DNA of 64,000 nucleotides from Camelus ferus (Eukaryota): NCBI RefSeq assembly GCF_009834535.1, contig NC_045701.1:32426001-32490000 (forward strand), read 5' to 3'. Position numbers and translations under genes: made by a program. Below the pieces are notes generated by a model. The model was given only the letters and a program-made list of their open reading frames with translations, made no database searches and had not been told where the DNA came from. This document shows positions 25,701-57,485 of this stretch, piece by piece; positions within the stretch are counted from its first letter, which is position 1; the number at the start of each line of letters is the position of its first letter.

Positions 25701-28700
25701 GTGGGGGGAGGGGAGAATTGTGCCTTCTCTGGCTCTGAACACATGACCCCCTCTGTTCTCAGGGCTCTGAAGTGCTAGAACAGGTGCTACACACCCTGAG
25801 CAAGTCAGGGAGCCTCGAGGAGCTGGTGCTGGACAACGCTGGGCTTAAGACGTGAGGCCAGCCTCCTCCTTGGGCAGTGGTACCCCCTCGATGTAGTCTT
25901 AGGGTCCCCAGAACCTTAGAGCATGATGTGGGCCTCTGAACTATTTCACCCAGCTCCTCACTTTACAGAAGAGGAGACTGAGGACCAAAGAGGGCACAAA
26001 GCAAGTCACACCTAAGCCTCTTGACCCCCAGCTCCATGGCCTTCCCCAGTCTGCCCCACCCCCTCCTGCCATCAGCCACTGAGCAGAATGCGCTGCTCCA
26101 GCCTCAAGGACCTGAAGCTGGGCTTTGTCTCAGCACAACTTCCCAGGTACTCCAGAGTGATGAGAAGCTCCCTGGCAGGCCCCGAGCTGCTTCCCACCTG
26201 TGGGGGCCTCTGGCCACTGCAGCCCCAGCCAGGCAGGCAGGTGGAGGAGGAGGGGCAGCCCAGGGGCTGGGANNNNNNNNNNNNNNNNNNNNNNNNNNNN
26301 NNNNNNNNNNNNNNNNNNNNNNNNNNNNNNNNNNNNNNNNNNNNNNNNNNNNNNNNNNNNNNNNNNNNNNNNNNNNNNNNNNNNNNNNNNNNNNNNNNNN
26401 NNNNNNNNNNNNNNNNNNNNNNNNNNNNTCAATGCAGACCCCTGTCCCAGCCCAGAGTCCAACCTGGGTCTGAATAGGAGCTCTCTGACCTATGACAGCC
26501 CCTACCCCAACACCGCCATCCTTGACCCCAGGCCTGTACTCCACTCAAGCCCCCAGTCTGACTCTGCACCACCTGTCCCCACCCCCCACCTCTCAGTGGG
26601 CCCATTTCTGTCTCCACTTCCCAGGTTTCTTCAGTCTGAGCCAGCAGCTCCTCTGCTTCCCCACTGGCCTCACCAAACTGTGCCTGGCCAAGACTGCCAT
26701 TTCCCCTCGAGGTACTTTCCCCAGGACCCCCCGACTTCTGACTCTGCCCCTCCCCCAGTGCTGCCTGGGTGTGGAGCCCCAGAGATACAGTCACACACTC
26801 ACACAGCATCCCAGGGACCAAGGAAGGGAAAGAAAACACGTGTCGGGAGCAGGGAAGAGCTGTGTACAAGGGAAAGAAGTGGGGATGGGGGCCAACCCAG
26901 CCCAGTGCCCGCTGTGCTCAGGGCTCCAGGCGCTGGGCCAGACCTTCGGGGCCAACCCGGCCTTTGCCAGCTCCCTTCGATACCTGGACCTGAGCAAGAA
27001 CCCTGGGCTGCTTGCCACCGATGAAGCCAATGTGAGTCCATAGTCCATGAACGTAGCCTCAAGCCCCTGCCTGCAGAAGCAAGCTCAGGCTTCAGGGCCT
27101 GAAGTCTCTGCCCTTAGCCCCAGTGAGGGGAGGGGGTCTGCCACCCTTCCCCCTGCAGCACCTCTGTCCTTCCTTCCCAGGCCCTCTACAGCTTCCTGGC
27201 CCAGCCCAATGCCCTGGTGCACCTGGACCTGGCGGGGACTGACTGCGCCATCGACTCGGTGAGGGGTTGGCAATGGGGGAGCTGGCCTGCGGTGATTTGG
27301 GGAAGCCAGAGTGGGCCTCTGCCTCACCCGCTCCTTGAGTACAGAAGTGGGCAGCGCTGGTGAATAGCTTGAGGTCCAGCCGAATTACAAAGCAACGCCA
27401 GAGCTCACACCTTCATGGCACTTTATCCCGGTGCTGCCCAAGGTTGTGCCTAAAAGCCAGCTCCAACCCATTCCCAGGCCGTGAACCCAGGTGCAGGGCT
27501 GAGTCCACAGGGAGGAAAGGACTCCTTCCTTAACTTGAACAAGGCACCTTATGAGTCTGTGATGGTCCTGGCCGTACCCATCCACTGCCTGTGAACCTCT
27601 CCAAACTACTGGGGGCCAGGCCGGTGGGAGCAGACAACCTACTTTGCATAGAGGGAACACTGAGGCTTGAAGAGGCTAAGATAGTGGGGCTGGCACAGAC
27701 TGACTGCAGAGGGTGAAGTGCCAGGTCCTTGATGAGGAGGGAGGAGGGAGTCCGTTCCAGCCCCGTGAGACACACTGGGTCTCTCCCCATAGCTTCTGGG
27801 TGCCCTGCTCCACGGCTGCTGCTCCCACCTCACCTACCTCAACCTGGCGCGCAACAGCTGCTCCCACAGGTGGGAGCACAGGGGTGCAGGGAGGGGTGGG
27901 ACACAGGCTGTGGGCGCCCCTTCCCTTGCTGACCCCAGGCATCTCTGCAGGAAGGGCCGGGAGGCCCCACCGGCCTTCAAGCAGTTCTTTAGCAGCGCCT
28001 ACACCCTGAGCCACATCAACCTGTCAGCCACGAGGCTGCCCTTGGAGGCCCTCAGGTCGGGTGGGTGCAGGGTTGGGGGGCGTCCGAGGGGGATCCTTGG
28101 GAGAAGGGGGGCGAGGGGTAAAGGTGGGCCTGCTGACCTTCCTCCCACAGGGCGCTGCTCCAGGGCCTCTCCCTCAACAGTCACCTCAGCGATCTGCACC
28201 TGGACCTCAGCAGCTGTGAGGTGAGCCCTCTGACCCCCACCCATCACCCCACCCTCCATTTCTCTGACCTAAGTCCAGCTCTGGCTCCATCTTGGCTCTG
28301 CACTGCCCCTCTGCAACCCCTGCCCCAAGCTGACCACATCCCCACTTTCCCTTCTCAGTCTCTGGTCTGCAGCCCTCTTTCCAGAGGTCATTTTCAGGCT
28401 CTGGATATCTCCTCCTTTAATGCTCTGGGGTGGGAGATACCAGGCTTTCCCACTAGAGGGCAGGAGCAAGCTGTCTCCGGAGCAGCAGCCTGGAAATTTT
28501 TCTGGCTGAAGGGAGGGGAGAGAGCCCTTGGGAAGGATCTGGTGTAAAGAAGGGTCCTTCTGATTTTAAACCTGAGACCCAGTATGACCTTGAATCCCGG
28601 CCTGACTACTCTTATCTCTAAGCATTAAAGGTGCCCTATCCTCTACCCTGACCCCTGCCTCCCCCGCCCTACCCCCACCACATCCCTGCAGCTCCGCTCA

Positions 28701-31700
28701 GCTGGAGCCCAGGCTTTGCAGGAGCAGCTGGGGGCTGTCACCTGTGTGGGCAGCCTGGATCTGTCTGACAATGGTGAGTGGGGGCACTTCCCTTCCTGGG
28801 ACTAGATGGGGACAGGGGCCTGGAACGTGGGAGAGAAGCTCTAAGGAGACTCCAGTGGGCCTCAGGCCTCATGGCCACGCCTCTCCTATCTACTGACCAG
28901 GGTTTGACTCGGACCTCCTGACACTGGTGCCCGCCCTTGGCAAGAACAAGTCCCTCAAGCACCTGTTCCTGGGCAAGAACTTCAACGTCAAGGCCAAGTG
29001 AGACCCCCTCCCTAGATCCACAGACCCTCACTCCATCATCCACCTGTCCTTCTGGCTGACTGTATTACCTCCGGCTGCCTGCTGCTCTAATAGCAAGACC
29101 CCAGCCCCCTCCCCTCCTGCTCTGAGCCCCACCTCCCCACAGGACCCTGGAGGAGATCCTCCACAAGCTGGTGCAGCTGATCCAGGAAGAGGACTGTGTG
29201 AGTGCCTGGGTCCGGGAGGGCGCCTGAGGGGTCAGGGCTGCAGGGACTGCGCCCAACCCCCCGCTTGCGCACGCAGTCCTTGCAGTCCCTGNNNNNNNNN
29301 NNNNNNNNNNNNNNNNNNNNNNNNNNNNNNNNNNNNNNNNNNNNNNNNNNNNNNNNNNNNNNNNNNNNNNNNNNNNNNNNNNNNNNNNNNNNNNNNNNNN
29401 NNNNNNNNNNNNNNNNNNNNNNNNNNNNNNNNNNNNNNNNNNNNNNNNNNNNNNNNNNNNNNNNNNNNNNNCTGGCCTGGAGTCCCAGCCCCGCCCCACC
29501 CCCCTACACACACACACATAGGCGCCCTCCCTGCTGTCTCGCTGCTCTGTTCCCCAGTTTTCAGGAGACCCTCAGTCCGAGAGCCATGTTGCAGTCAGCC
29601 TCATTACCCAGGAAAGGAGGGAGGGCCCTCCGGGGGTGTGTCCCTGTCCCCTAAGAGAGATCCAGACGGAGGGGTAACAAGTTGGTGCTGACCCTCTCCC
29701 CAGAACTATCCTATGGGATCGGAACAATACGTCCGCCCTGGGCTTTCTGGATATTGCAAGGGCCTTGGAGAGGTGAGTAGACCAGGGCCCTGCCCTGACC
29801 CAAGCCTTCAGCCTCTCTGTATCTGGACCAGGCCTGAGCTACACTAGCCCCACCCCAGCCCGCTTGACCTCATTGTATAGAAATGTTAGGAAGAACCACA
29901 GGAGAGGGAAATGGTCAGCCAGAGGAGGGGTTTGGGGAGCGGGGGCCTCTCCTGCCCACCTCTTCCCACGCAGCTGTGCTGCTCTGTCCCACAGCAACCA
30001 CACGCTGCGTTTCATGTCCTTCCCTGTGAGCGACATCTCCCAAGCCTACCGCAGTGCCCCGGAGCGCACCGAGGACGTCTGGCAGAAGGTGGTGGTCTGA
30101 GCAGGGTGGAACGCGAGGGGCAGGGACCAGCCCACATCCCCTGGCCCTGACCCCACCCCCACCCGCTTTCCTCTCCAGATCCAGTGGTGCTTGGTGAGGA
30201 ACAACCACTCCCAGACGTGCCCCCAGGAACAGGCCTTCAGGCTGCAGCAGGGCCTGGTGACCAGCAGCGCCGAGCAAGTAAATGTTTCCCTCTGGGACAC
30301 GGGGCACGTGTGGCGCATGCAGGGCCCGGGTGTGATATGATGGAGCACAGGGCGGGGCGGGGAGAGGGCAGGGAAGAGGCATCATGTGGCGTCCACAACA
30401 AGGTTGAGCACGTGGGAGAGCAAAAAGACAGGACATGCAGAATGTGAACCCCAAATATGAGAGAACATGTAGGCAGACATCAGAGGGTCCCAGACAAGGG
30501 ATGCACAAGCCTGTGGGAGCTCCACTGAGCATTCAAGAAGGGCACCCCAAGAGGAAGAGGAAACAGGCCCTCCAGAGACATCACTATTACCCCTGTCAGC
30601 GCTGGCACCAGCAGCACTGCACAAAGGGGCCCAGAAACAGGGCACCTGGGGGCCTACCTGGGAAAGTGAAGATTCAGCGGTCCCCTGACCTTCCTGCCAC
30701 CTGTGCTACAGATGCTGCAGCGGCTGTGTGGACGGGTGCAGGAGGAGGTTCGGGCCCTGAGGCTGTGCCCCCTGGAGCCTGTGCAGGATGAGCTGCTCTA
30801 TGCTCGGGACCTCATCAAGGATGCCAAGAATTCCCGGGCGGTGAGCCCTCCACAGCCCCACCCTCCCCTCACAGCCTGGAGAGCCCAAGAAGGCCAGCAT
30901 ATGAACCCAGGAGTGGCCCGGCCCTGTGCCATGCATCTGCCCCCCGCCACTGCCCAGGGCCCCCAGGGACCTAGCGAGGCCTGATTCTGGCCTTCTGACC
31001 AGAACCCCTTCCTTCCAGCTGTTTCCCAGCCTCTATGAGCTGGGCCACATGCTGGCCAACGATGGGCCTGTGCGGCAGAGGCTGGAGTCAGTAGCCAGTG
31101 AGGTGTCCAAGGCTGTGGACAAGGAGCTACAGGCAAGTCCTGGGGAGGGAGCCCAGGGCTGACCAAGGCCCTAAGCTGAGGGCCAAGGTCAGCTTGGGGA
31201 GATTCCTGTGGGCAAAAAGGAAATGCAGACTTGAGACCACCTACACCCACATTGTGCCGAACGCATTGCTAGAAAACTGGGTTTGGATTTTTGCTGCTAG
31301 CTTCAATCTTAGCCCTCAAACTCTGACCTCTCCCTCTAGACTCTGATCTTTGGACTGACTCGCCCCTGCCCACATGGCCATGTAGTAGGATGGAAGGGAC
31401 ACTGACCAGAATGGGGGAAGCCTGAGTGTCCAGACTCTGCTGCTAACCAGCCCCATGACCTTGGCGAGCCCCTCAGTCTCAGGGGAGCTGGAATAGACAG
31501 GCTGGAGTCTGTTCCACTGTGCTGCCAGCCCTGACCCTGCCTTCCTTGGGGCTCTGGCCTCACTTCCCCCCATACTAGGTTATCCTGGAGTCCATGGTCA
31601 GCCTAACGCAGGAGTTATGCCCCGTGGCCATGCGGGTGGCCGAGGGGCACAACAAGATGCTGAGCAACGTGGCGGAGCGTGTCACTGTGCCCCGGAACTT

Positions 31701-49382: not shown

Positions 49383-50315
49383 TCACAAAAGCTGCATTCT
49401 CTCAGCTCCTTGTCAGACTAGGGAAAGTCTCACCTCAGCCCGCAGAGAGGCAGGAGGTAGCAGGGGCACCCTATGCAGGTCTGGAGGCCAAGGCAGCATG
49501 GAGGGAGCAACAGAGGACCAGTGCATGGGCTCATCCACCACCTAGGCTGCAGTCAGGAAGCTGGAGTTGGGGGCTTCTCGGGGACACCATTAGGGATCCC
49601 ACCCTGAGATGCCAGAACTGAAAAAGTGTCAGAAGTCATCCAATCCAAATGAGGATTAGATGAGGCAATCAAGACCAGGGAGCAAATGGTTTGCTCAAGG
49701 TGACAGAGGCATCCTGTGGCAGAGCTGAGACTAGGGCCGAGGTCTTCAGACTCCTGTTCGGTGTTCTCTCTGAGCCCACACCCACCACAGGTCTTGTTGC
49801 ATTGGGCCCTGGAGGCCACTGGGTTGGACAGGAAGAGAGCCTCTTGAATAGAGCTCCTGGTCTGCCTTGATATTGGGAATTGAAATGAAAATGCAGTAGT
49901 CCTAAAATGGGGAGGCTACAAGTCTTGGAATGAAAACACAGCCTCATTGCTAATTACCACCTTAATGCACTACAGGTTGAAAACCTTGAATTAAAATCTA
50001 AACTGAGGGAGGAGCTGCACCACTCCCTCACCTCCCATTCACTGTGTCACCCAGCCATCATCCACGCTCCCTTCCCTCGCCCCCATACGCACAGTGCCTG
50101 GCACTGACTCCTGCGGATTTCAGTGTCCTGGTCATGTAGAATGGGGCAGGAGGTGGAAGGTTTCTGTGCACATCCTGTGTGAGGGGACGGGACCCCTTTC
50201 CCAGAAAATGACCAGCATGTAACCCCGGAGTATGCCTTGAGGGTCCAGGAAATTGGGGGATAGTTGTGTGGTCATTCAAAGGAGTGTCTAGCACCAGAAA
50301 GAGCTCAGTAACCAT

Positions 50316-52024
50316 CTAGTGAATGGTACAGCCGCCTCCGGGGTGGGGGGCCCCGCCCGCCCACCGACTCCACCACTCCGCGGCCAGCGGCTCAGAAGAA
50401 GTGGGAATGGCCTCTGGCTCCGAGCAGCTCGGGGCCAGCCGGTCACAGCGAGCCTTGTAGAGGTCGCGCTCCCTGGCCAGGCGGGCNNNNNNNNNNNNNN
50501 NNNNNNNNNNNNNNNNNNNNNNNNNNNNNNNNNNNNNNNNNNNNNNNNNNNNNNNNNNNNNNNNNNNNNNNNNNNNNNNNNNNNNNNNNNNNNNNNNNNN
50601 NNNNNNNNNNNNNNNNNNNNNNNNNNNNNNNNNNNNNNNNNNNNNNNNNNNNNNNNNNNNNNNNNNNNNNNNNNNNNNNNNNNNNNNNNNNNNNNNNNGC
50701 GTCCGAAAACCGCTCCGCCAGCTGCAGAGGGAACGGGCAGGGCCCCCGGTCAGCGCCGGCATTTTGGGGACTCCACGCTAGTGTCGCGTTGCCCTCTGGC
50801 CCCGCCCTCGGGAAGGCTCCGCCTCCGGCTGCCACCTTCACCTGAACGCCCGCCTTCCCCTGAATCCAACCAGCGGTCTAGATCCCGCCCCAGGTCCCAA
50901 CACGCCTCCCCTGCCCCACCCCAACCTCCGCCACGGGTCCTTGCCCTGGGACACGTATCCCCGTACCCTCTCCTAACCACCGTCGGTGGAGCCAATCGCG
51001 CGCCTGAAACCCGCGCCGCCCTGCGCGGTCCTCAGCACCCGCTCCAGGCCCACATGCGTCCAGTGGGCCCGGGCCCAACAGACCCTGACCCTCCGACGCA
51101 CCTCGCTTCTCTGTCCTAAAGGCCGCAACCCTGTGACCCTCAAAGGATTTAGATTACATCTTAATACCCTCAACACCCCCATCTGTGTCTATAACTAATA
51201 GGATGAGTCCCAATCCTTTCTGAGAAGGTTGAGGGCTGGGGAAGCACGGAGTCTTGAAAAGTCTAACCTCATCCTGGTTCCCACAGTCTCAGCTTCGCTC
51301 CATTCCACGCACAACCCTTTCCCCGGTTTCCACAGACAGACTATCTATTTACCACCCGGTAATCAACTGTTCCTGATGCCCTTTAAGTCTCAACTCTCCC
51401 CTTTCTAACCTTATCTTCTCCCCCTCCCTCCTGGTTCAGCCTACTCATTTCTCTCCATTTGGGGGAAAAAAAGGAGGGGCCAGAACATAGTTTTCTCTAT
51501 CTGATATTTTTCAAGGCCCTTCTTCCCTTCCCCTGAACTCTGGCCCTTTCCCAGTCAGAACCCTCTCCAGGGTCTCTCCTTCCTCTCTGGGCTGGCCTCC
51601 TCCTTCACCTGCACTGCCTCAGATCAGCTCACTGATCACTCACCTGGGCATGTTGGGCTCCTGTCTCTTCTGGGCTCCCTGGATAGTAGGTGTGGGAGCC
51701 CTCAACAGGGACTGGGCCCTGACCCTGCAGCAGCTCCACGGCCTCCTCAGGACTCAGCCCCAGTGCCTCCCCAGCCCCCAGCTGCTGCTGCAGGGTGGCC
51801 AGCCAGTACAGCTCCTCCAGGCCTGGCCGGCTGCTGTCGGTGGCCCCCGCCATGCCTGGATCACTGAAGGTAGGTGAAGGAGGCACTGAGCTGTAGGGTG
51901 TGGAGCCCAGTGAGGCTGTGGCGGGGCCAGATCGCCCCTCAGAGGGTTCCCTCTTTACCTCAAACTTCATCAGGTCAAAGTCATTGACATACTCCATGGC
52001 CAGGGGACTGGGAGGGAGTGCCAT
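50316..52024 (-). CDS. NRL: Neural retina leucine zipper (large Maf bZIP, rod photoreceptor determinant), 2 coding exons, bZIP core in an N gap
   Basis: Coding exon 52024-51644 (381 nt): [27 protein letters not shown]...[12 protein letters not shown]...GAQHAQ. Last exon starts at 50721 (LAERFSD), gap 50487-50698, then [17 protein letters not shown]. As sequenced the frame ends at TAG 50318-50316. The ancestral-position TGA (50394-50392) is out of frame. Confidence 0.95.
50320..51110. other. NRL: CpG island over the NRL last exon and intron end
   Basis: CpG-dense on both sides of gap 50487-50698. Confidence 0.6.
50487..50698. other. NRL: Assembly gap (212 N) hiding the NRL basic region/leucine zipper
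   Basis: LAERFSD precedes the gap and [10 protein letters not shown] follows it. Confidence 0.95.
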
Positions 52025-57302: not shown

Positions 57303-57485
57303 NNNNNNNNNNNNNNNNNNNNNNNNNNNNNNNNNNNNNNNNNNNNNNNNNNNNNNNNNNNNNNNNNNNNNNNNNNNNNNNNNNNNNNNNNNNNNNNNNN
57401 NNNNNNNNNNNNNNNNNNNNNNNNNNNNNNNNNNNNNNNNNNNNNNNNNNNNNNNNNNNNNNNNNNNNNNNNNNNNNNNNNNNNN
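57303..57485. other. Assembly gap (183 N), intergenic
   Basis: Run of N. Confidence 0.95.

What the first reader, a model, noticed from the sequence alone, without database searches (positions are those of the whole stretch)
50316..50440. NRL C-terminal frameshift bypasses the ancestral stop and creates a novel, Trp-rich tail (about 261 aa versus 237)
Seen (minus strand): after ...YKARCDRL the frame reads [39 protein letters not shown] (TAG 50318-50316). Shifting by one base near 50420 gives GGA GCC AGA GGC CAT TCC CAC TTC TTC TGA GCCG (GARGHSHFF*), which parallels the human tail GSGDPSHLFL* TGA GCCG as recalled. The segment is 47 nt versus 51 nt. The leucine zipper itself is unaffected and the stop is in the last exon, so NMD is not expected. 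Inference: a lineage-specific new tail on the master rod-fate transcription factor, built from former 3'UTR. Many neighbouring substitutions suggest an old, real change, but the site is only about 65 nt from an N gap in GC-rich DNA, so a base-calling error is a serious alternative.
Basis: partly seen in the sequence, partly recalled or inferred. Interest (0 to 1): 0.7.

Follow-up and report, generated by a model that had tools for sequence, protein, structure and literature searches.

The report
Old frameshift tail on camel NRL
The odd, longer end of the camel's rod-cell master regulator NRL is real, but it comes from a one-base deletion shared by camels, cattle, deer and whales; it is not a camel novelty or a sequencing error, and the new tail has since been kept by natural selection.

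Summary
Observation confirmed. On the minus strand, after ...YKARCDRL the frame runs 39 codons to TAG 50318-50316. The old stop (TGA 50394-50392) is out of frame.

The interpretation needs correcting. The same tail is annotated in NRL of three Camelus species, vicuña, cattle, deer, musk deer, muntjac and about ten cetaceans (261-262 aa). All other mammals sampled end ...GDHxHFFL at 237 aa.

A DNA alignment shows three deletions:
- a 1-nt deletion in a C/G run (about 50421-50426), shared by all seven cetartiodactyl sequences and absent from bat, rhinoceros, pangolin and bear;
- a shared 3-nt deletion;
- a camelid-only 3-nt deletion.

So this is neither a base-calling error nor camelid-specific. 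It arose on the Cetartiodactyla stem.

The former 3'UTR now evolves as coding sequence. Omega is 0.20 (likelihood-ratio P = 3e-6). Changes fall 7/9/23 by codon position, against 13/12/9 in the outgroups' UTR. There are no frame-breaking indels.

The tail replaces the FF[LM] end that most large Mafs in the sample carry. AlphaFold2 models it with low confidence. I found no paper describing it. Moderate interest.

Caveat: the 212-N run hiding the bZIP is 1 nt longer than the 211-nt spacing seen in eight other mammals.

The parts
51644..52024 (-). NRL first coding exon: 127 codons, ATG at 52024-52022, GT donor at 51643-51642.
   Evidence: sequence and splice signals. Pfam Maf_N E=4.5e-18. The protein is identical over these 127 residues to NRL of all three Camelus species.
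50699..50721 (-). Start of the last exon (LAERFSDA...), after the acceptor AG at 50723-50722.
   Evidence: This frame matches the exon-3 start of other mammals' NRL (consensus).
50487..50698 (.). N run of 212 nt that hides the extended-homology, basic and zipper region. Left untouched.
   Evidence: The frames on its two sides differ by 1 nt. The same two flanks are 211 nt apart in 8 other mammals (lengths only).
50436..50486 (-). Last conserved residues in the ancestral frame, [17 protein letters not shown] (end of the bZIP helix).
   Evidence: Conserved in all mammals sampled. In the AlphaFold2 model of bovine NRL the helix ends at residue 222.
50421..50426 (-). Site of the 1-nt deletion (ancestral AGC GGC CCC GGG run). 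MAFFT places it between 50425 and 50424. This is the frameshift.
   Evidence: the gap is present in all 7 cetartiodactyl sequences and absent in Myotis, Ceratotherium, Manis and Ursus.
50319..50435 (-). The 39-codon tail (APSC...CTIH). From about 50423 downstream it is read in the new frame, and from 50391 downstream it is former 3'UTR.
   Evidence: Omega 0.20, likelihood-ratio P=3e-6. Changes by codon position 7/9/23.
50394..50400 (-). Site of the camelid-only 3-nt deletion within TTCTTC[CTC]TGA. It is in frame in the new reading frame and removes one Ser.
   Evidence: the gap is in the window and in vicuña only.
50392..50394 (-). Relic of the ancestral stop TGA, now out of frame and read as part of TCT GAG.
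50385..50386 (-). Junction of a 3-nt deletion shared by all cetartiodactyls (outgroups GCT TGG GGCC; here GCT GGCC).
50361..50378 (-). Trp-rich core EWWSRW. It is invariant at protein level in all cetartiodactyl tails seen. The corresponding DNA is already present in the outgroups' 3'UTR.
   Evidence: AlphaFold2 gives a weak helix at bovine residues 241-249, pLDDT below 60.
50316..50318 (-). New stop TAG, within ATTCACTAGATGG.
   Evidence: conserved in all 7 cetartiodactyl sequences. It is CAG in rhinoceros and pangolin.

Best explanation
The window carries the NRL gene (large-Maf bZIP factor that specifies rods) of a Bactrian-type camel. In the common ancestor of Cetartiodactyla, one base was lost from a C/G run 4-5 codons after the end of the bZIP helix (window about 50421-50426). 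Ribosomes therefore pass the ancestral TGA (50394-50392) out of frame and read about 75 nt of former 3'UTR up to a TAG (50318-50316). The last 9-10 ancestral residues, including the ...HFFL end that nearly all the other large Mafs in the sample keep in some form, are replaced by 33-34 new residues (Pro/Ser/Gly-rich, then EWWSRWAGG...CTIH). Shown here: the shared deletion, its distribution across species, the homology of the tail to the outgroups' UTR, and coding-type purifying selection on the new frame in cetartiodactyls only. Inferred: the tail is translated in the retina and has become useful, or at least constrained. One possibility is a short aromatic motif on a flexible linker that stands in for the lost aromatic FFL end. 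The bZIP, dimerisation and DNA binding would be unchanged, and no NMD is expected because the stop is in the last exon. Camelids later lost one more codon in frame.
For: Sequence: searches give the frame and both stops. Distribution: NRL proteins with the same tail are annotated in Camelus bactrianus, C. ferus and C. dromedarius, Vicugna, Bos, Cervus, Moschus, Muntiacus, Rangifer and about 10 cetaceans. About 30 other mammal, monotreme, marsupial and reptile NRLs end in FFL, LFL or LLL. DNA alignment: a 1-nt gap and a 3-nt gap are shared by all 7 cetartiodactyl sequences, and an extra 3-nt gap is in camelids only. Four outgroups lack all three gaps and keep TTCTTCCTCTGA in frame. Selection: pairwise pN/pS is 0.12-0.36 in the new frame against 0.7-5 in the other two sense frames. 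Parsimony changes by codon position are 7/9/23, P=9e-4. For the same columns the counts are 5/4/17 in cetartiodactyls and 13/12/9 in outgroups, Fisher P=0.004. By maximum likelihood omega is 0.20, and the test against omega=1 gives 2dlnL=22, P=3e-6. For comparison, exon 2 has pN/pS 0.10-0.18. Indels: none break the frame in the cetartiodactyl tails, while rhinoceros (-4), pangolin (-1) and bear (-16) carry frame-breaking indels in the homologous UTR. Tolerance of changes at this end: human tail variants S225N and L235F are classed non-pathogenic (PMC4812529), and NRL with a fluorescent protein fused to its C-terminus is nuclear and gives the strongest NRL-NRL FRET signal of the constructs tested (PMC9050680).
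Against: No transcript or peptide evidence could be consulted, so translation of the tail is inferred from the gene structure. The selection tests rest on 36 codons and 7 sequences, two of which are unnamed contigs from public sequencing runs. An antisense frame that shares third codon positions scores almost as low (pN/pS 0.31) and is open apart from one TGA at its 5' end. An open frame alone means little here, because one other sense frame is also stop-free in this G+C-rich DNA. The NRL 3'UTR is itself strongly conserved (0.245 changes per site, equal to tail positions 1+2), so part of the constraint could act at RNA level. No named pig or hippopotamus sequence was available. AlphaFold2 gives the tail low confidence (pLDDT 42-59), so no structural role is shown. 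In the window as given, the N run puts the two visible exon parts 1 nt out of phase.
Confidence: 0.88

Rival explanations
1. Assembly or base-calling error: a base was dropped in G+C-rich DNA about 65 nt from an N gap, and the real camel protein ends ...HFF(L) at the TGA.
For: The site lies in a C/G run close to an N run. The N run itself is 1 nt out of phase with the spacing conserved in other mammals. The C. ferus RefSeq model is flagged LOW QUALITY PROTEIN.
Against: The identical tail is annotated in C. bactrianus and C. ferus. Near-identical tails are in two dromedary assemblies and in vicuña. The same 1-nt gap is present in cattle, dolphin, baleen whale and two other contigs. Restoring one base would not restore the ancestral end in camelids, which have also lost the Leu codon. 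Substitutions show codon periodicity in the new frame.
Confidence: 0.02
2. Camelid-specific innovation: the frameshift arose within Camelidae.
For: Camelids do have private changes: a 3-nt deletion (261 versus 262 aa), SEPEAI instead of GPEAT, and Cys for Gly in Bactrian-type camels.
Against: The frame-shifting 1-nt deletion and the whole downstream tail, including the same TAG, are shared with ruminants and cetaceans. Independent identical deletions followed by the same 3-nt deletion in three or more lineages would be far less parsimonious.
Confidence: 0.03
3. The frameshift is real and old, but the tail is a tolerated, functionless appendage. The apparent coding constraint would come from something else: RNA-level constraint on the 3'UTR, an antisense ORF (window 50323-50460, plus strand), or sampling noise.
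For: The UTR downstream is as conserved as tail codon positions 1+2. The antisense frame sharing third positions gives pN/pS 0.31. AlphaFold2 models the tail with low confidence. Human tail variants are benign.
Against: The three-base periodicity is absent from the same columns in outgroups, where the region is plain UTR (13/12/9 against 5/4/17, Fisher P=0.004). It appears only where the NRL frame runs through the region. An antisense gene has no reason to arise together with the frameshift. Third-position changes run 2.6 times faster than in the UTR, which RNA-level constraint does not predict. Omega=1 is rejected at P=3e-6. Frame-breaking indels occur in 3 of 4 outgroups and in 0 of 7 cetartiodactyls.
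Confidence: 0.1
4. NRL is decaying in this animal: the extra base implied by the 212-N run is real and breaks the bZIP frame, so the tail is moot.
For: The N run is 212 nt against 211 nt in 8 other mammals, leaving the visible exon parts out of phase.
Against: N-run lengths need not be true to the base. Exon 2 is intact and identical in three Camelus species, with pN/pS 0.11-0.18. The C. bactrianus and dromedary models are not flagged low quality and span the bZIP. From general knowledge, camels have rod-dominated retinas.
Confidence: 0.02

Closest known systems
Canonical mammalian NRL (237 aa, e.g. bat, rhinoceros, pangolin, bear, rodent, marsupial and monotreme orthologues)
   Same: Same gene and two-coding-exon layout. 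Same Maf_N activation region: exon 2 is identical within Camelus and at least 74% identical over the full length to bovine NRL across the mammals aligned. Same end of the bZIP helix...[13 protein letters not shown].
   Different: The last 9-10 residues (...SGDHxHFFL) are replaced by 33-34 residues read from former 3'UTR. The protein is 261-262 aa. The ancestral stop is out of frame.
Large Maf paralogues (MAF, MAFA, MAFB) and non-mammalian NRL
   Same: bZIP_Maf plus Maf_N architecture. A short tail follows the zipper.
   Different: Most of those sampled end in an aromatic FF[LM]-type motif (EFFM, DFFL, HFFL, QFFL and others). A few sequences have other ends such as TSVM or TTVM. Cetartiodactyl NRL is the one clade in the sample that has lost this end. 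The function of the motif is unknown to me.
Frameshift-derived new C-termini in protein evolution (a general phenomenon described in the molecular-evolution literature; recalled from memory, not checked here)
   Same: An indel that is not a multiple of three near the 3' end, read-through into the UTR, no NMD because the stop is in the last exon, and later purifying selection on the new frame.
   Different: Here it sits in a cell-fate master regulator, is fixed across a whole mammalian order, and can be dated by outgroups that still hold the homologous UTR.
Human NRL variants in the C-terminal tail (S225N, L235F)
   Same: They affect the same post-zipper tail.
   Different: They are single substitutions in a 237-aa protein, classed as non-pathogenic (PMC4812529). 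The cetartiodactyl change replaces the whole tail.

Membership tests
NRL orthologue (large Maf bZIP family) | N-terminal Maf activation region (Pfam Maf_N, PF08383) | tested here: met
   Exon-2 product 51644-52024(-): Maf_N E=4.5e-18, 65 bits against a cut-off of 27.
NRL orthologue (large Maf bZIP family) | Closest relatives are NRL, not MAF, MAFA or MAFB | tested here: met
   The best hits are NRL: BLASTP gives 99% to the Camelus cluster representative, and a direct comparison finds no mismatch in the 127 exon-2 residues. Other mammals score 78-94%. MAF, MAFA and MAFB score about 45-58%.
NRL orthologue (large Maf bZIP family) | Extended homology region, basic region and leucine zipper (Pfam bZIP_Maf, PF03131) | not testable with these tools
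   In the window this part is the N run 50487-50698, left unread by rule. Only its flanks LAERFSDA and [17 protein letters not shown] are visible. RefSeq Camelus NRL models carry PF03131.
NRL orthologue (large Maf bZIP family) | Two coding exons with the intron after Gln127 and before LAERFSD | tested here: met
   Donor CAG|GTGAGT at 51644/51643 and acceptor CAG|CTGGCG at 50722/50721.
NRL orthologue (large Maf bZIP family) | Short post-zipper tail ending in the aromatic FF[LM]-type motif | tested here: not met
   The tail ends ...GGGCTIH after 39 residues. FFL-type ends are seen in about 30 other NRLs and in most large Mafs sampled. This is the variant feature. It does not affect orthology.
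Frameshift-born coding extension from 3'UTR | An indel that is not a multiple of three relative to outgroups, upstream of the old stop | tested here: met
   A 1-nt gap in all 7 cetartiodactyl sequences and in none of 4 outgroups.
Frameshift-born coding extension from 3'UTR | The new residues align to the outgroups' untranslated sequence | tested here: met
   Tail codons 25-48 align to the 3'UTR of Myotis, Ceratotherium, Manis and Ursus.
Frameshift-born coding extension from 3'UTR | Purifying selection on the new frame after the event | tested here: met
   Omega 0.20, likelihood-ratio P=3e-6. Third-position excess in cetartiodactyls only. Caveat: the antisense frame sharing third positions scores 0.31.
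Frameshift-born coding extension from 3'UTR | The extension is actually translated | not testable with these tools
   No RNA-seq, Ribo-seq or proteome data could be consulted. It is inferred from continuity with the NRL reading frame.

The most novel reading that the evidence does not exclude
After the frameshift removed the FFL end typical of large Mafs, cetartiodactyl NRL recruited a piece of conserved 3'UTR as a new functional module: a flexible Pro/Ser/Gly linker followed by an invariant Trp-rich motif (EWWSRWAGG). This module is now needed for normal NRL stability, partner binding or transactivation. It would be a dated (roughly 60-80 million years, from general knowledge of the clade's age) case of de novo functional peptide birth in a photoreceptor fate regulator, and it would also show what the unexplained large-Maf C-terminal motif does.
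Probability: 0.3. Interest if true: 0.6.

Novelty: new variant of a known kind. Interest (0 to 1): 0.4.

Why it matters
NRL decides rod versus cone fate and is a human retinal-disease gene. A whole mammalian order, including cattle and probably pigs (no named pig sequence was available) and so the usual sources of retina for biochemistry and large-animal models, carries an NRL whose C-terminus differs entirely from the human and mouse one. The new part is under selection. Three things follow. First, antibodies or constructs aimed at the C-terminus will not transfer between these species. Second, the FFL-type end shared by most large Mafs can evidently be lost without losing rods. Third, the locus is a clean natural experiment, datable with outgroups, on how untranslated RNA becomes constrained protein. 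For this scan, it also shows that a frameshift next to an N gap can be genuine.

Tried and rejected
1. Base-calling error: rejected by independent assemblies and the shared indel.
2. Camelid-only origin: rejected.
3. Open frame as evidence of coding: rejected as uninformative, because another sense frame and two antisense frames are also stop-free in this G+C-rich stretch.
4. Antisense ORF as the source of the periodicity: considered. It is not excluded by stops (one TGA at its 5' end only) or by pN/pS (0.31). It is disfavoured because the periodicity is absent in outgroups.
No named pig or hippopotamus NRL turned up in the tail search.
6. Literature: four searches found no paper on this tail. 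A 2026 preprint on MAF/OTX evolution does not mention artiodactyls, cetaceans, frameshift or extension.
7. AlphaFold2 of bovine NRL: the tail has low confidence, so no fold search was attempted.
8. Earlier notes of this scan: none on this locus.
9. I did not read the letters under the N run from any source. I measured only the spacing of its flanks in other species. A 29-species consensus printed by the aligner was not used to fill the run.

Full report
**What is in the window.** The minus strand of 50316-52024 carries the two coding exons of NRL.
- The first coding exon runs 51644-52024: ATG at 52024, 127 codons, donor CAG|GTGAGT. It has a Pfam Maf_N match at E=4.5e-18.
- At protein level it is identical to NRL of Camelus bactrianus, C. 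ferus and C. dromedarius. It differs at 2 residues from vicuña and at 9-10 from cattle and killer whale.
- The last exon starts at 50721 (LAERFSDA). It is then hidden by 212 N (50487-50698) and reappears at 50486 as [17 protein letters not shown].

**The observation.** After ...CDRL the frame continues for 39 codons ([39 protein letters not shown]) to TAG 50318-50316. The frame one base over reads GARGHSHFF and then TGA at 50394-50392.

**Distribution across species.**
- A protein search with the exon-2 product returned NRL from many vertebrates.
- I printed only the parts from the YKARC motif onward.
- About 30 NRLs from primates, rodents, bats, carnivores, a mole, shrews, afrotherians, xenarthrans, marsupials, monotremes, turtles and alligators end in a short tail closing with FFL, LFL or LLL. 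Typical length is 237 aa.
- Every cetartiodactyl NRL carries the long tail. Examples are Camelus bactrianus and C. ferus (identical to the window, including 'APSC'), C. dromedarius and Vicugna ('APSG', 261 aa core), and Bos, Cervus, Moschus and Muntiacus (262 aa, ...[40 protein letters not shown]).
- Rangifer has a 237-aa partial model cut inside the tail.
- About ten cetaceans also carry it (262 aa).
- A search with the whale tail alone found only these clusters plus two unnamed families of contigs from public sequencing runs.
- The 'APSC' variant places the window in a Bactrian or wild Bactrian camel.

**The mutations.** I fetched the last exon and 3' flank of vicuña, cattle, a dolphin, a baleen whale, two unnamed contig families (one ruminant-like, one pig-like), and four outgroups: Myotis, Ceratotherium, Manis and Ursus. 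I aligned them from YKARC onward.
- Deletion 1: all seven cetartiodactyl sequences lack one base in the ancestral run AGC GGC CCC GGG. In the window this maps between 50425 and 50424, and is ambiguous within 50421-50426.
- Deletion 2: all seven also lack three bases just 3' of the old stop (window junction 50386/50385).
- Deletion 3: the two camelids alone lack three more bases in TTCTTC[CTC]TGA (window 50394-50400). This is in frame in the new reading frame and explains 261 versus 262 aa.
- The four outgroups have none of these gaps and read ...GDHxHFFL then stop.
- The new TAG sits in ATTCACTAGATGG in all seven. It is CAG in rhinoceros and pangolin.
- By parsimony the frameshift arose once, on the stem of Cetartiodactyla. 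Camelids, ruminants and cetaceans span the crown group (established phylogeny, not tested here).
- The error hypothesis fails, because these are independent assemblies of different species.

**Is the new tail evolving as protein?** Conservation alone says little, because the NRL 3'UTR is very conserved in all eleven species. An open frame alone also says little, because another sense frame is stop-free too. Five tests address the question.
1. Pairwise Nei-Gojobori pN/pS over the 36 new-frame codons is 0.12-0.36 for deep pairs. It is 0.7-5 in the other two sense frames.
2. Fitch parsimony on the accepted tree gives 7/9/23 changes at codon positions 1/2/3 (binomial P=9e-4). Positions 1+2 change at 0.22 per site, the UTR beyond the TAG at 0.245, and position 3 at 0.64.
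3. For the columns that lie 3' of the old stop, cetartiodactyls give 5/4/17 and the four outgroups give 13/12/9 (Fisher P=0.004). The periodicity exists only where the NRL frame reads through.
4. A codon model (GY+F1X4, fixed tree) gives omega 0.20 and kappa 4.4. Fixing omega at 1 costs 2dlnL=22.05, P=3e-6.
5. There are no frame-breaking indels in the seven tails. Rhinoceros (-4), pangolin (-1) and bear (-16) have them in the homologous UTR.

For scale, exon 2 has pN/pS 0.10-0.18, so the tail is constrained, though less tightly.

Caveat: the antisense frame that shares third positions gives 0.31 and is open except for a TGA at its 5' end. Such mirror signals are expected opposite real coding DNA, and an antisense gene would not explain why the signal is missing in outgroups.

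**Where the Trp-rich sequence came from.** Read in the cetartiodactyl frame, the outgroups' UTR gives the following.
- Myotis: EPLGATEWWWNRLGW..., by chance open to the same TAG.
- Rhinoceros: [15 protein letters not shown]...
- Pangolin: ESLGATEWWTGW...

So the GAGTGGTGG... element existed as conserved UTR before it became codons.

**What the change does to the protein.**
- The bZIP helix of bovine NRL is modelled with high confidence up to residue 222. The tail has pLDDT 42-59, with a weak helix over LATEWWSRW.
- The tail is therefore probably a flexible appendage with a short aromatic segment. This is a low-confidence reading.
- It replaces an aromatic C-terminal motif that is shared by most large Mafs in the sample: EFFM, DFFL, HFFL, QFFL and others.
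- Two published observations fit a tolerant C-terminus. Human S225N and L235F are regarded as non-pathogenic (PMC4812529). NRL with a fluorescent protein fused at its C-terminus is nuclear and gives the strongest NRL-NRL FRET signal of the constructs tested (PMC9050680).
- Whether the new tail has gained a role is not known. The selection signal argues that it is not free to vary.

**Novelty.** The extended proteins are in RefSeq and UniProt, so the sequence fact is public. Four literature searches and a look at a 2026 preprint on MAF evolution found no description of the frameshift, its age, or selection on the tail. I class it as a new variant of a known kind, of moderate interest.

**A loose end.** The N run is 212 nt, but the same two flanks are 211 nt apart in vicuña, cattle, dolphin, bat, rhinoceros, bear and both unnamed contig families (lengths only). 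As given, the two visible parts of the last exon are therefore 1 nt out of phase. The C. ferus RefSeq model is labelled LOW QUALITY PROTEIN. I did not look at the hidden letters. This does not bear on the tail, whose frame is fixed by the visible [17 protein letters not shown].

Noticed in passing
window 50487-50698: The N run over the NRL bZIP is 212 nt, while the same flanks are 211 nt apart in 8 other mammals. The visible exon parts are therefore 1 nt out of phase. The C. ferus RefSeq NRL is flagged LOW QUALITY PROTEIN. The letters were not looked up.
   Followed up: partly
window 26273-26428, 29292-29471, 57303-57485: Three more N runs (156, 180 and 183 nt). Their flanks show no obvious coding frame, and all three lengths are multiples of three.
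   Followed up: no
window 50100-50315 (minus strand): The NRL 3'UTR just beyond the new TAG is strikingly conserved across camel, ruminants, whales, bat, rhinoceros, pangolin and bear (long identical blocks). This suggests a regulatory RNA element.
   Followed up: no
L012 (Myotis daubentonii), 3' of the NRL stop: In this bat the 3'UTR, read in the cetartiodactyl frame, is open all the way to the same TAG (EPLGATEWWWNRLGWAHHPEGSCLIH). A single-base loss there would recreate a similar tail. The other three outgroups are broken by indels.
   Followed up: partly
P0121, P0122, P0128, P0147 (ruminant NRL): Ruminants changed the otherwise near-invariant ...YKARCDRL to ...YKARCELL at the very end of the bZIP helix, just before the new tail.
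   Followed up: no
P0124 (Bos taurus TPA model, 264 aa) and P0134 (Capra hircus model, 262 aa): Two database models give the bovine and goat protein different ends by splicing out of the tail (after ...EWW and after ...GPE). They disagree with each other and with RefSeq. They are probably prediction artefacts, but alternative 3' splicing was not excluded.
   Followed up: no
P0001, P0126 (306 aa), P0129 (285 aa), P0127 (344 aa): Camelus RefSeq isoforms add 24-83 residues upstream of the canonical Met (window 52024). These are predicted N-terminal extensions from upstream exons, which vicuña, cattle and whale models lack.
   Followed up: no
window 50323-50460 (plus strand): A 45-codon antisense ORF overlaps the tail in the phase that shares third codon positions. 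It is open in all seven cetartiodactyls apart from a TGA at its 5' end, and it mirrors the low pN/pS (0.31).
   Followed up: partly
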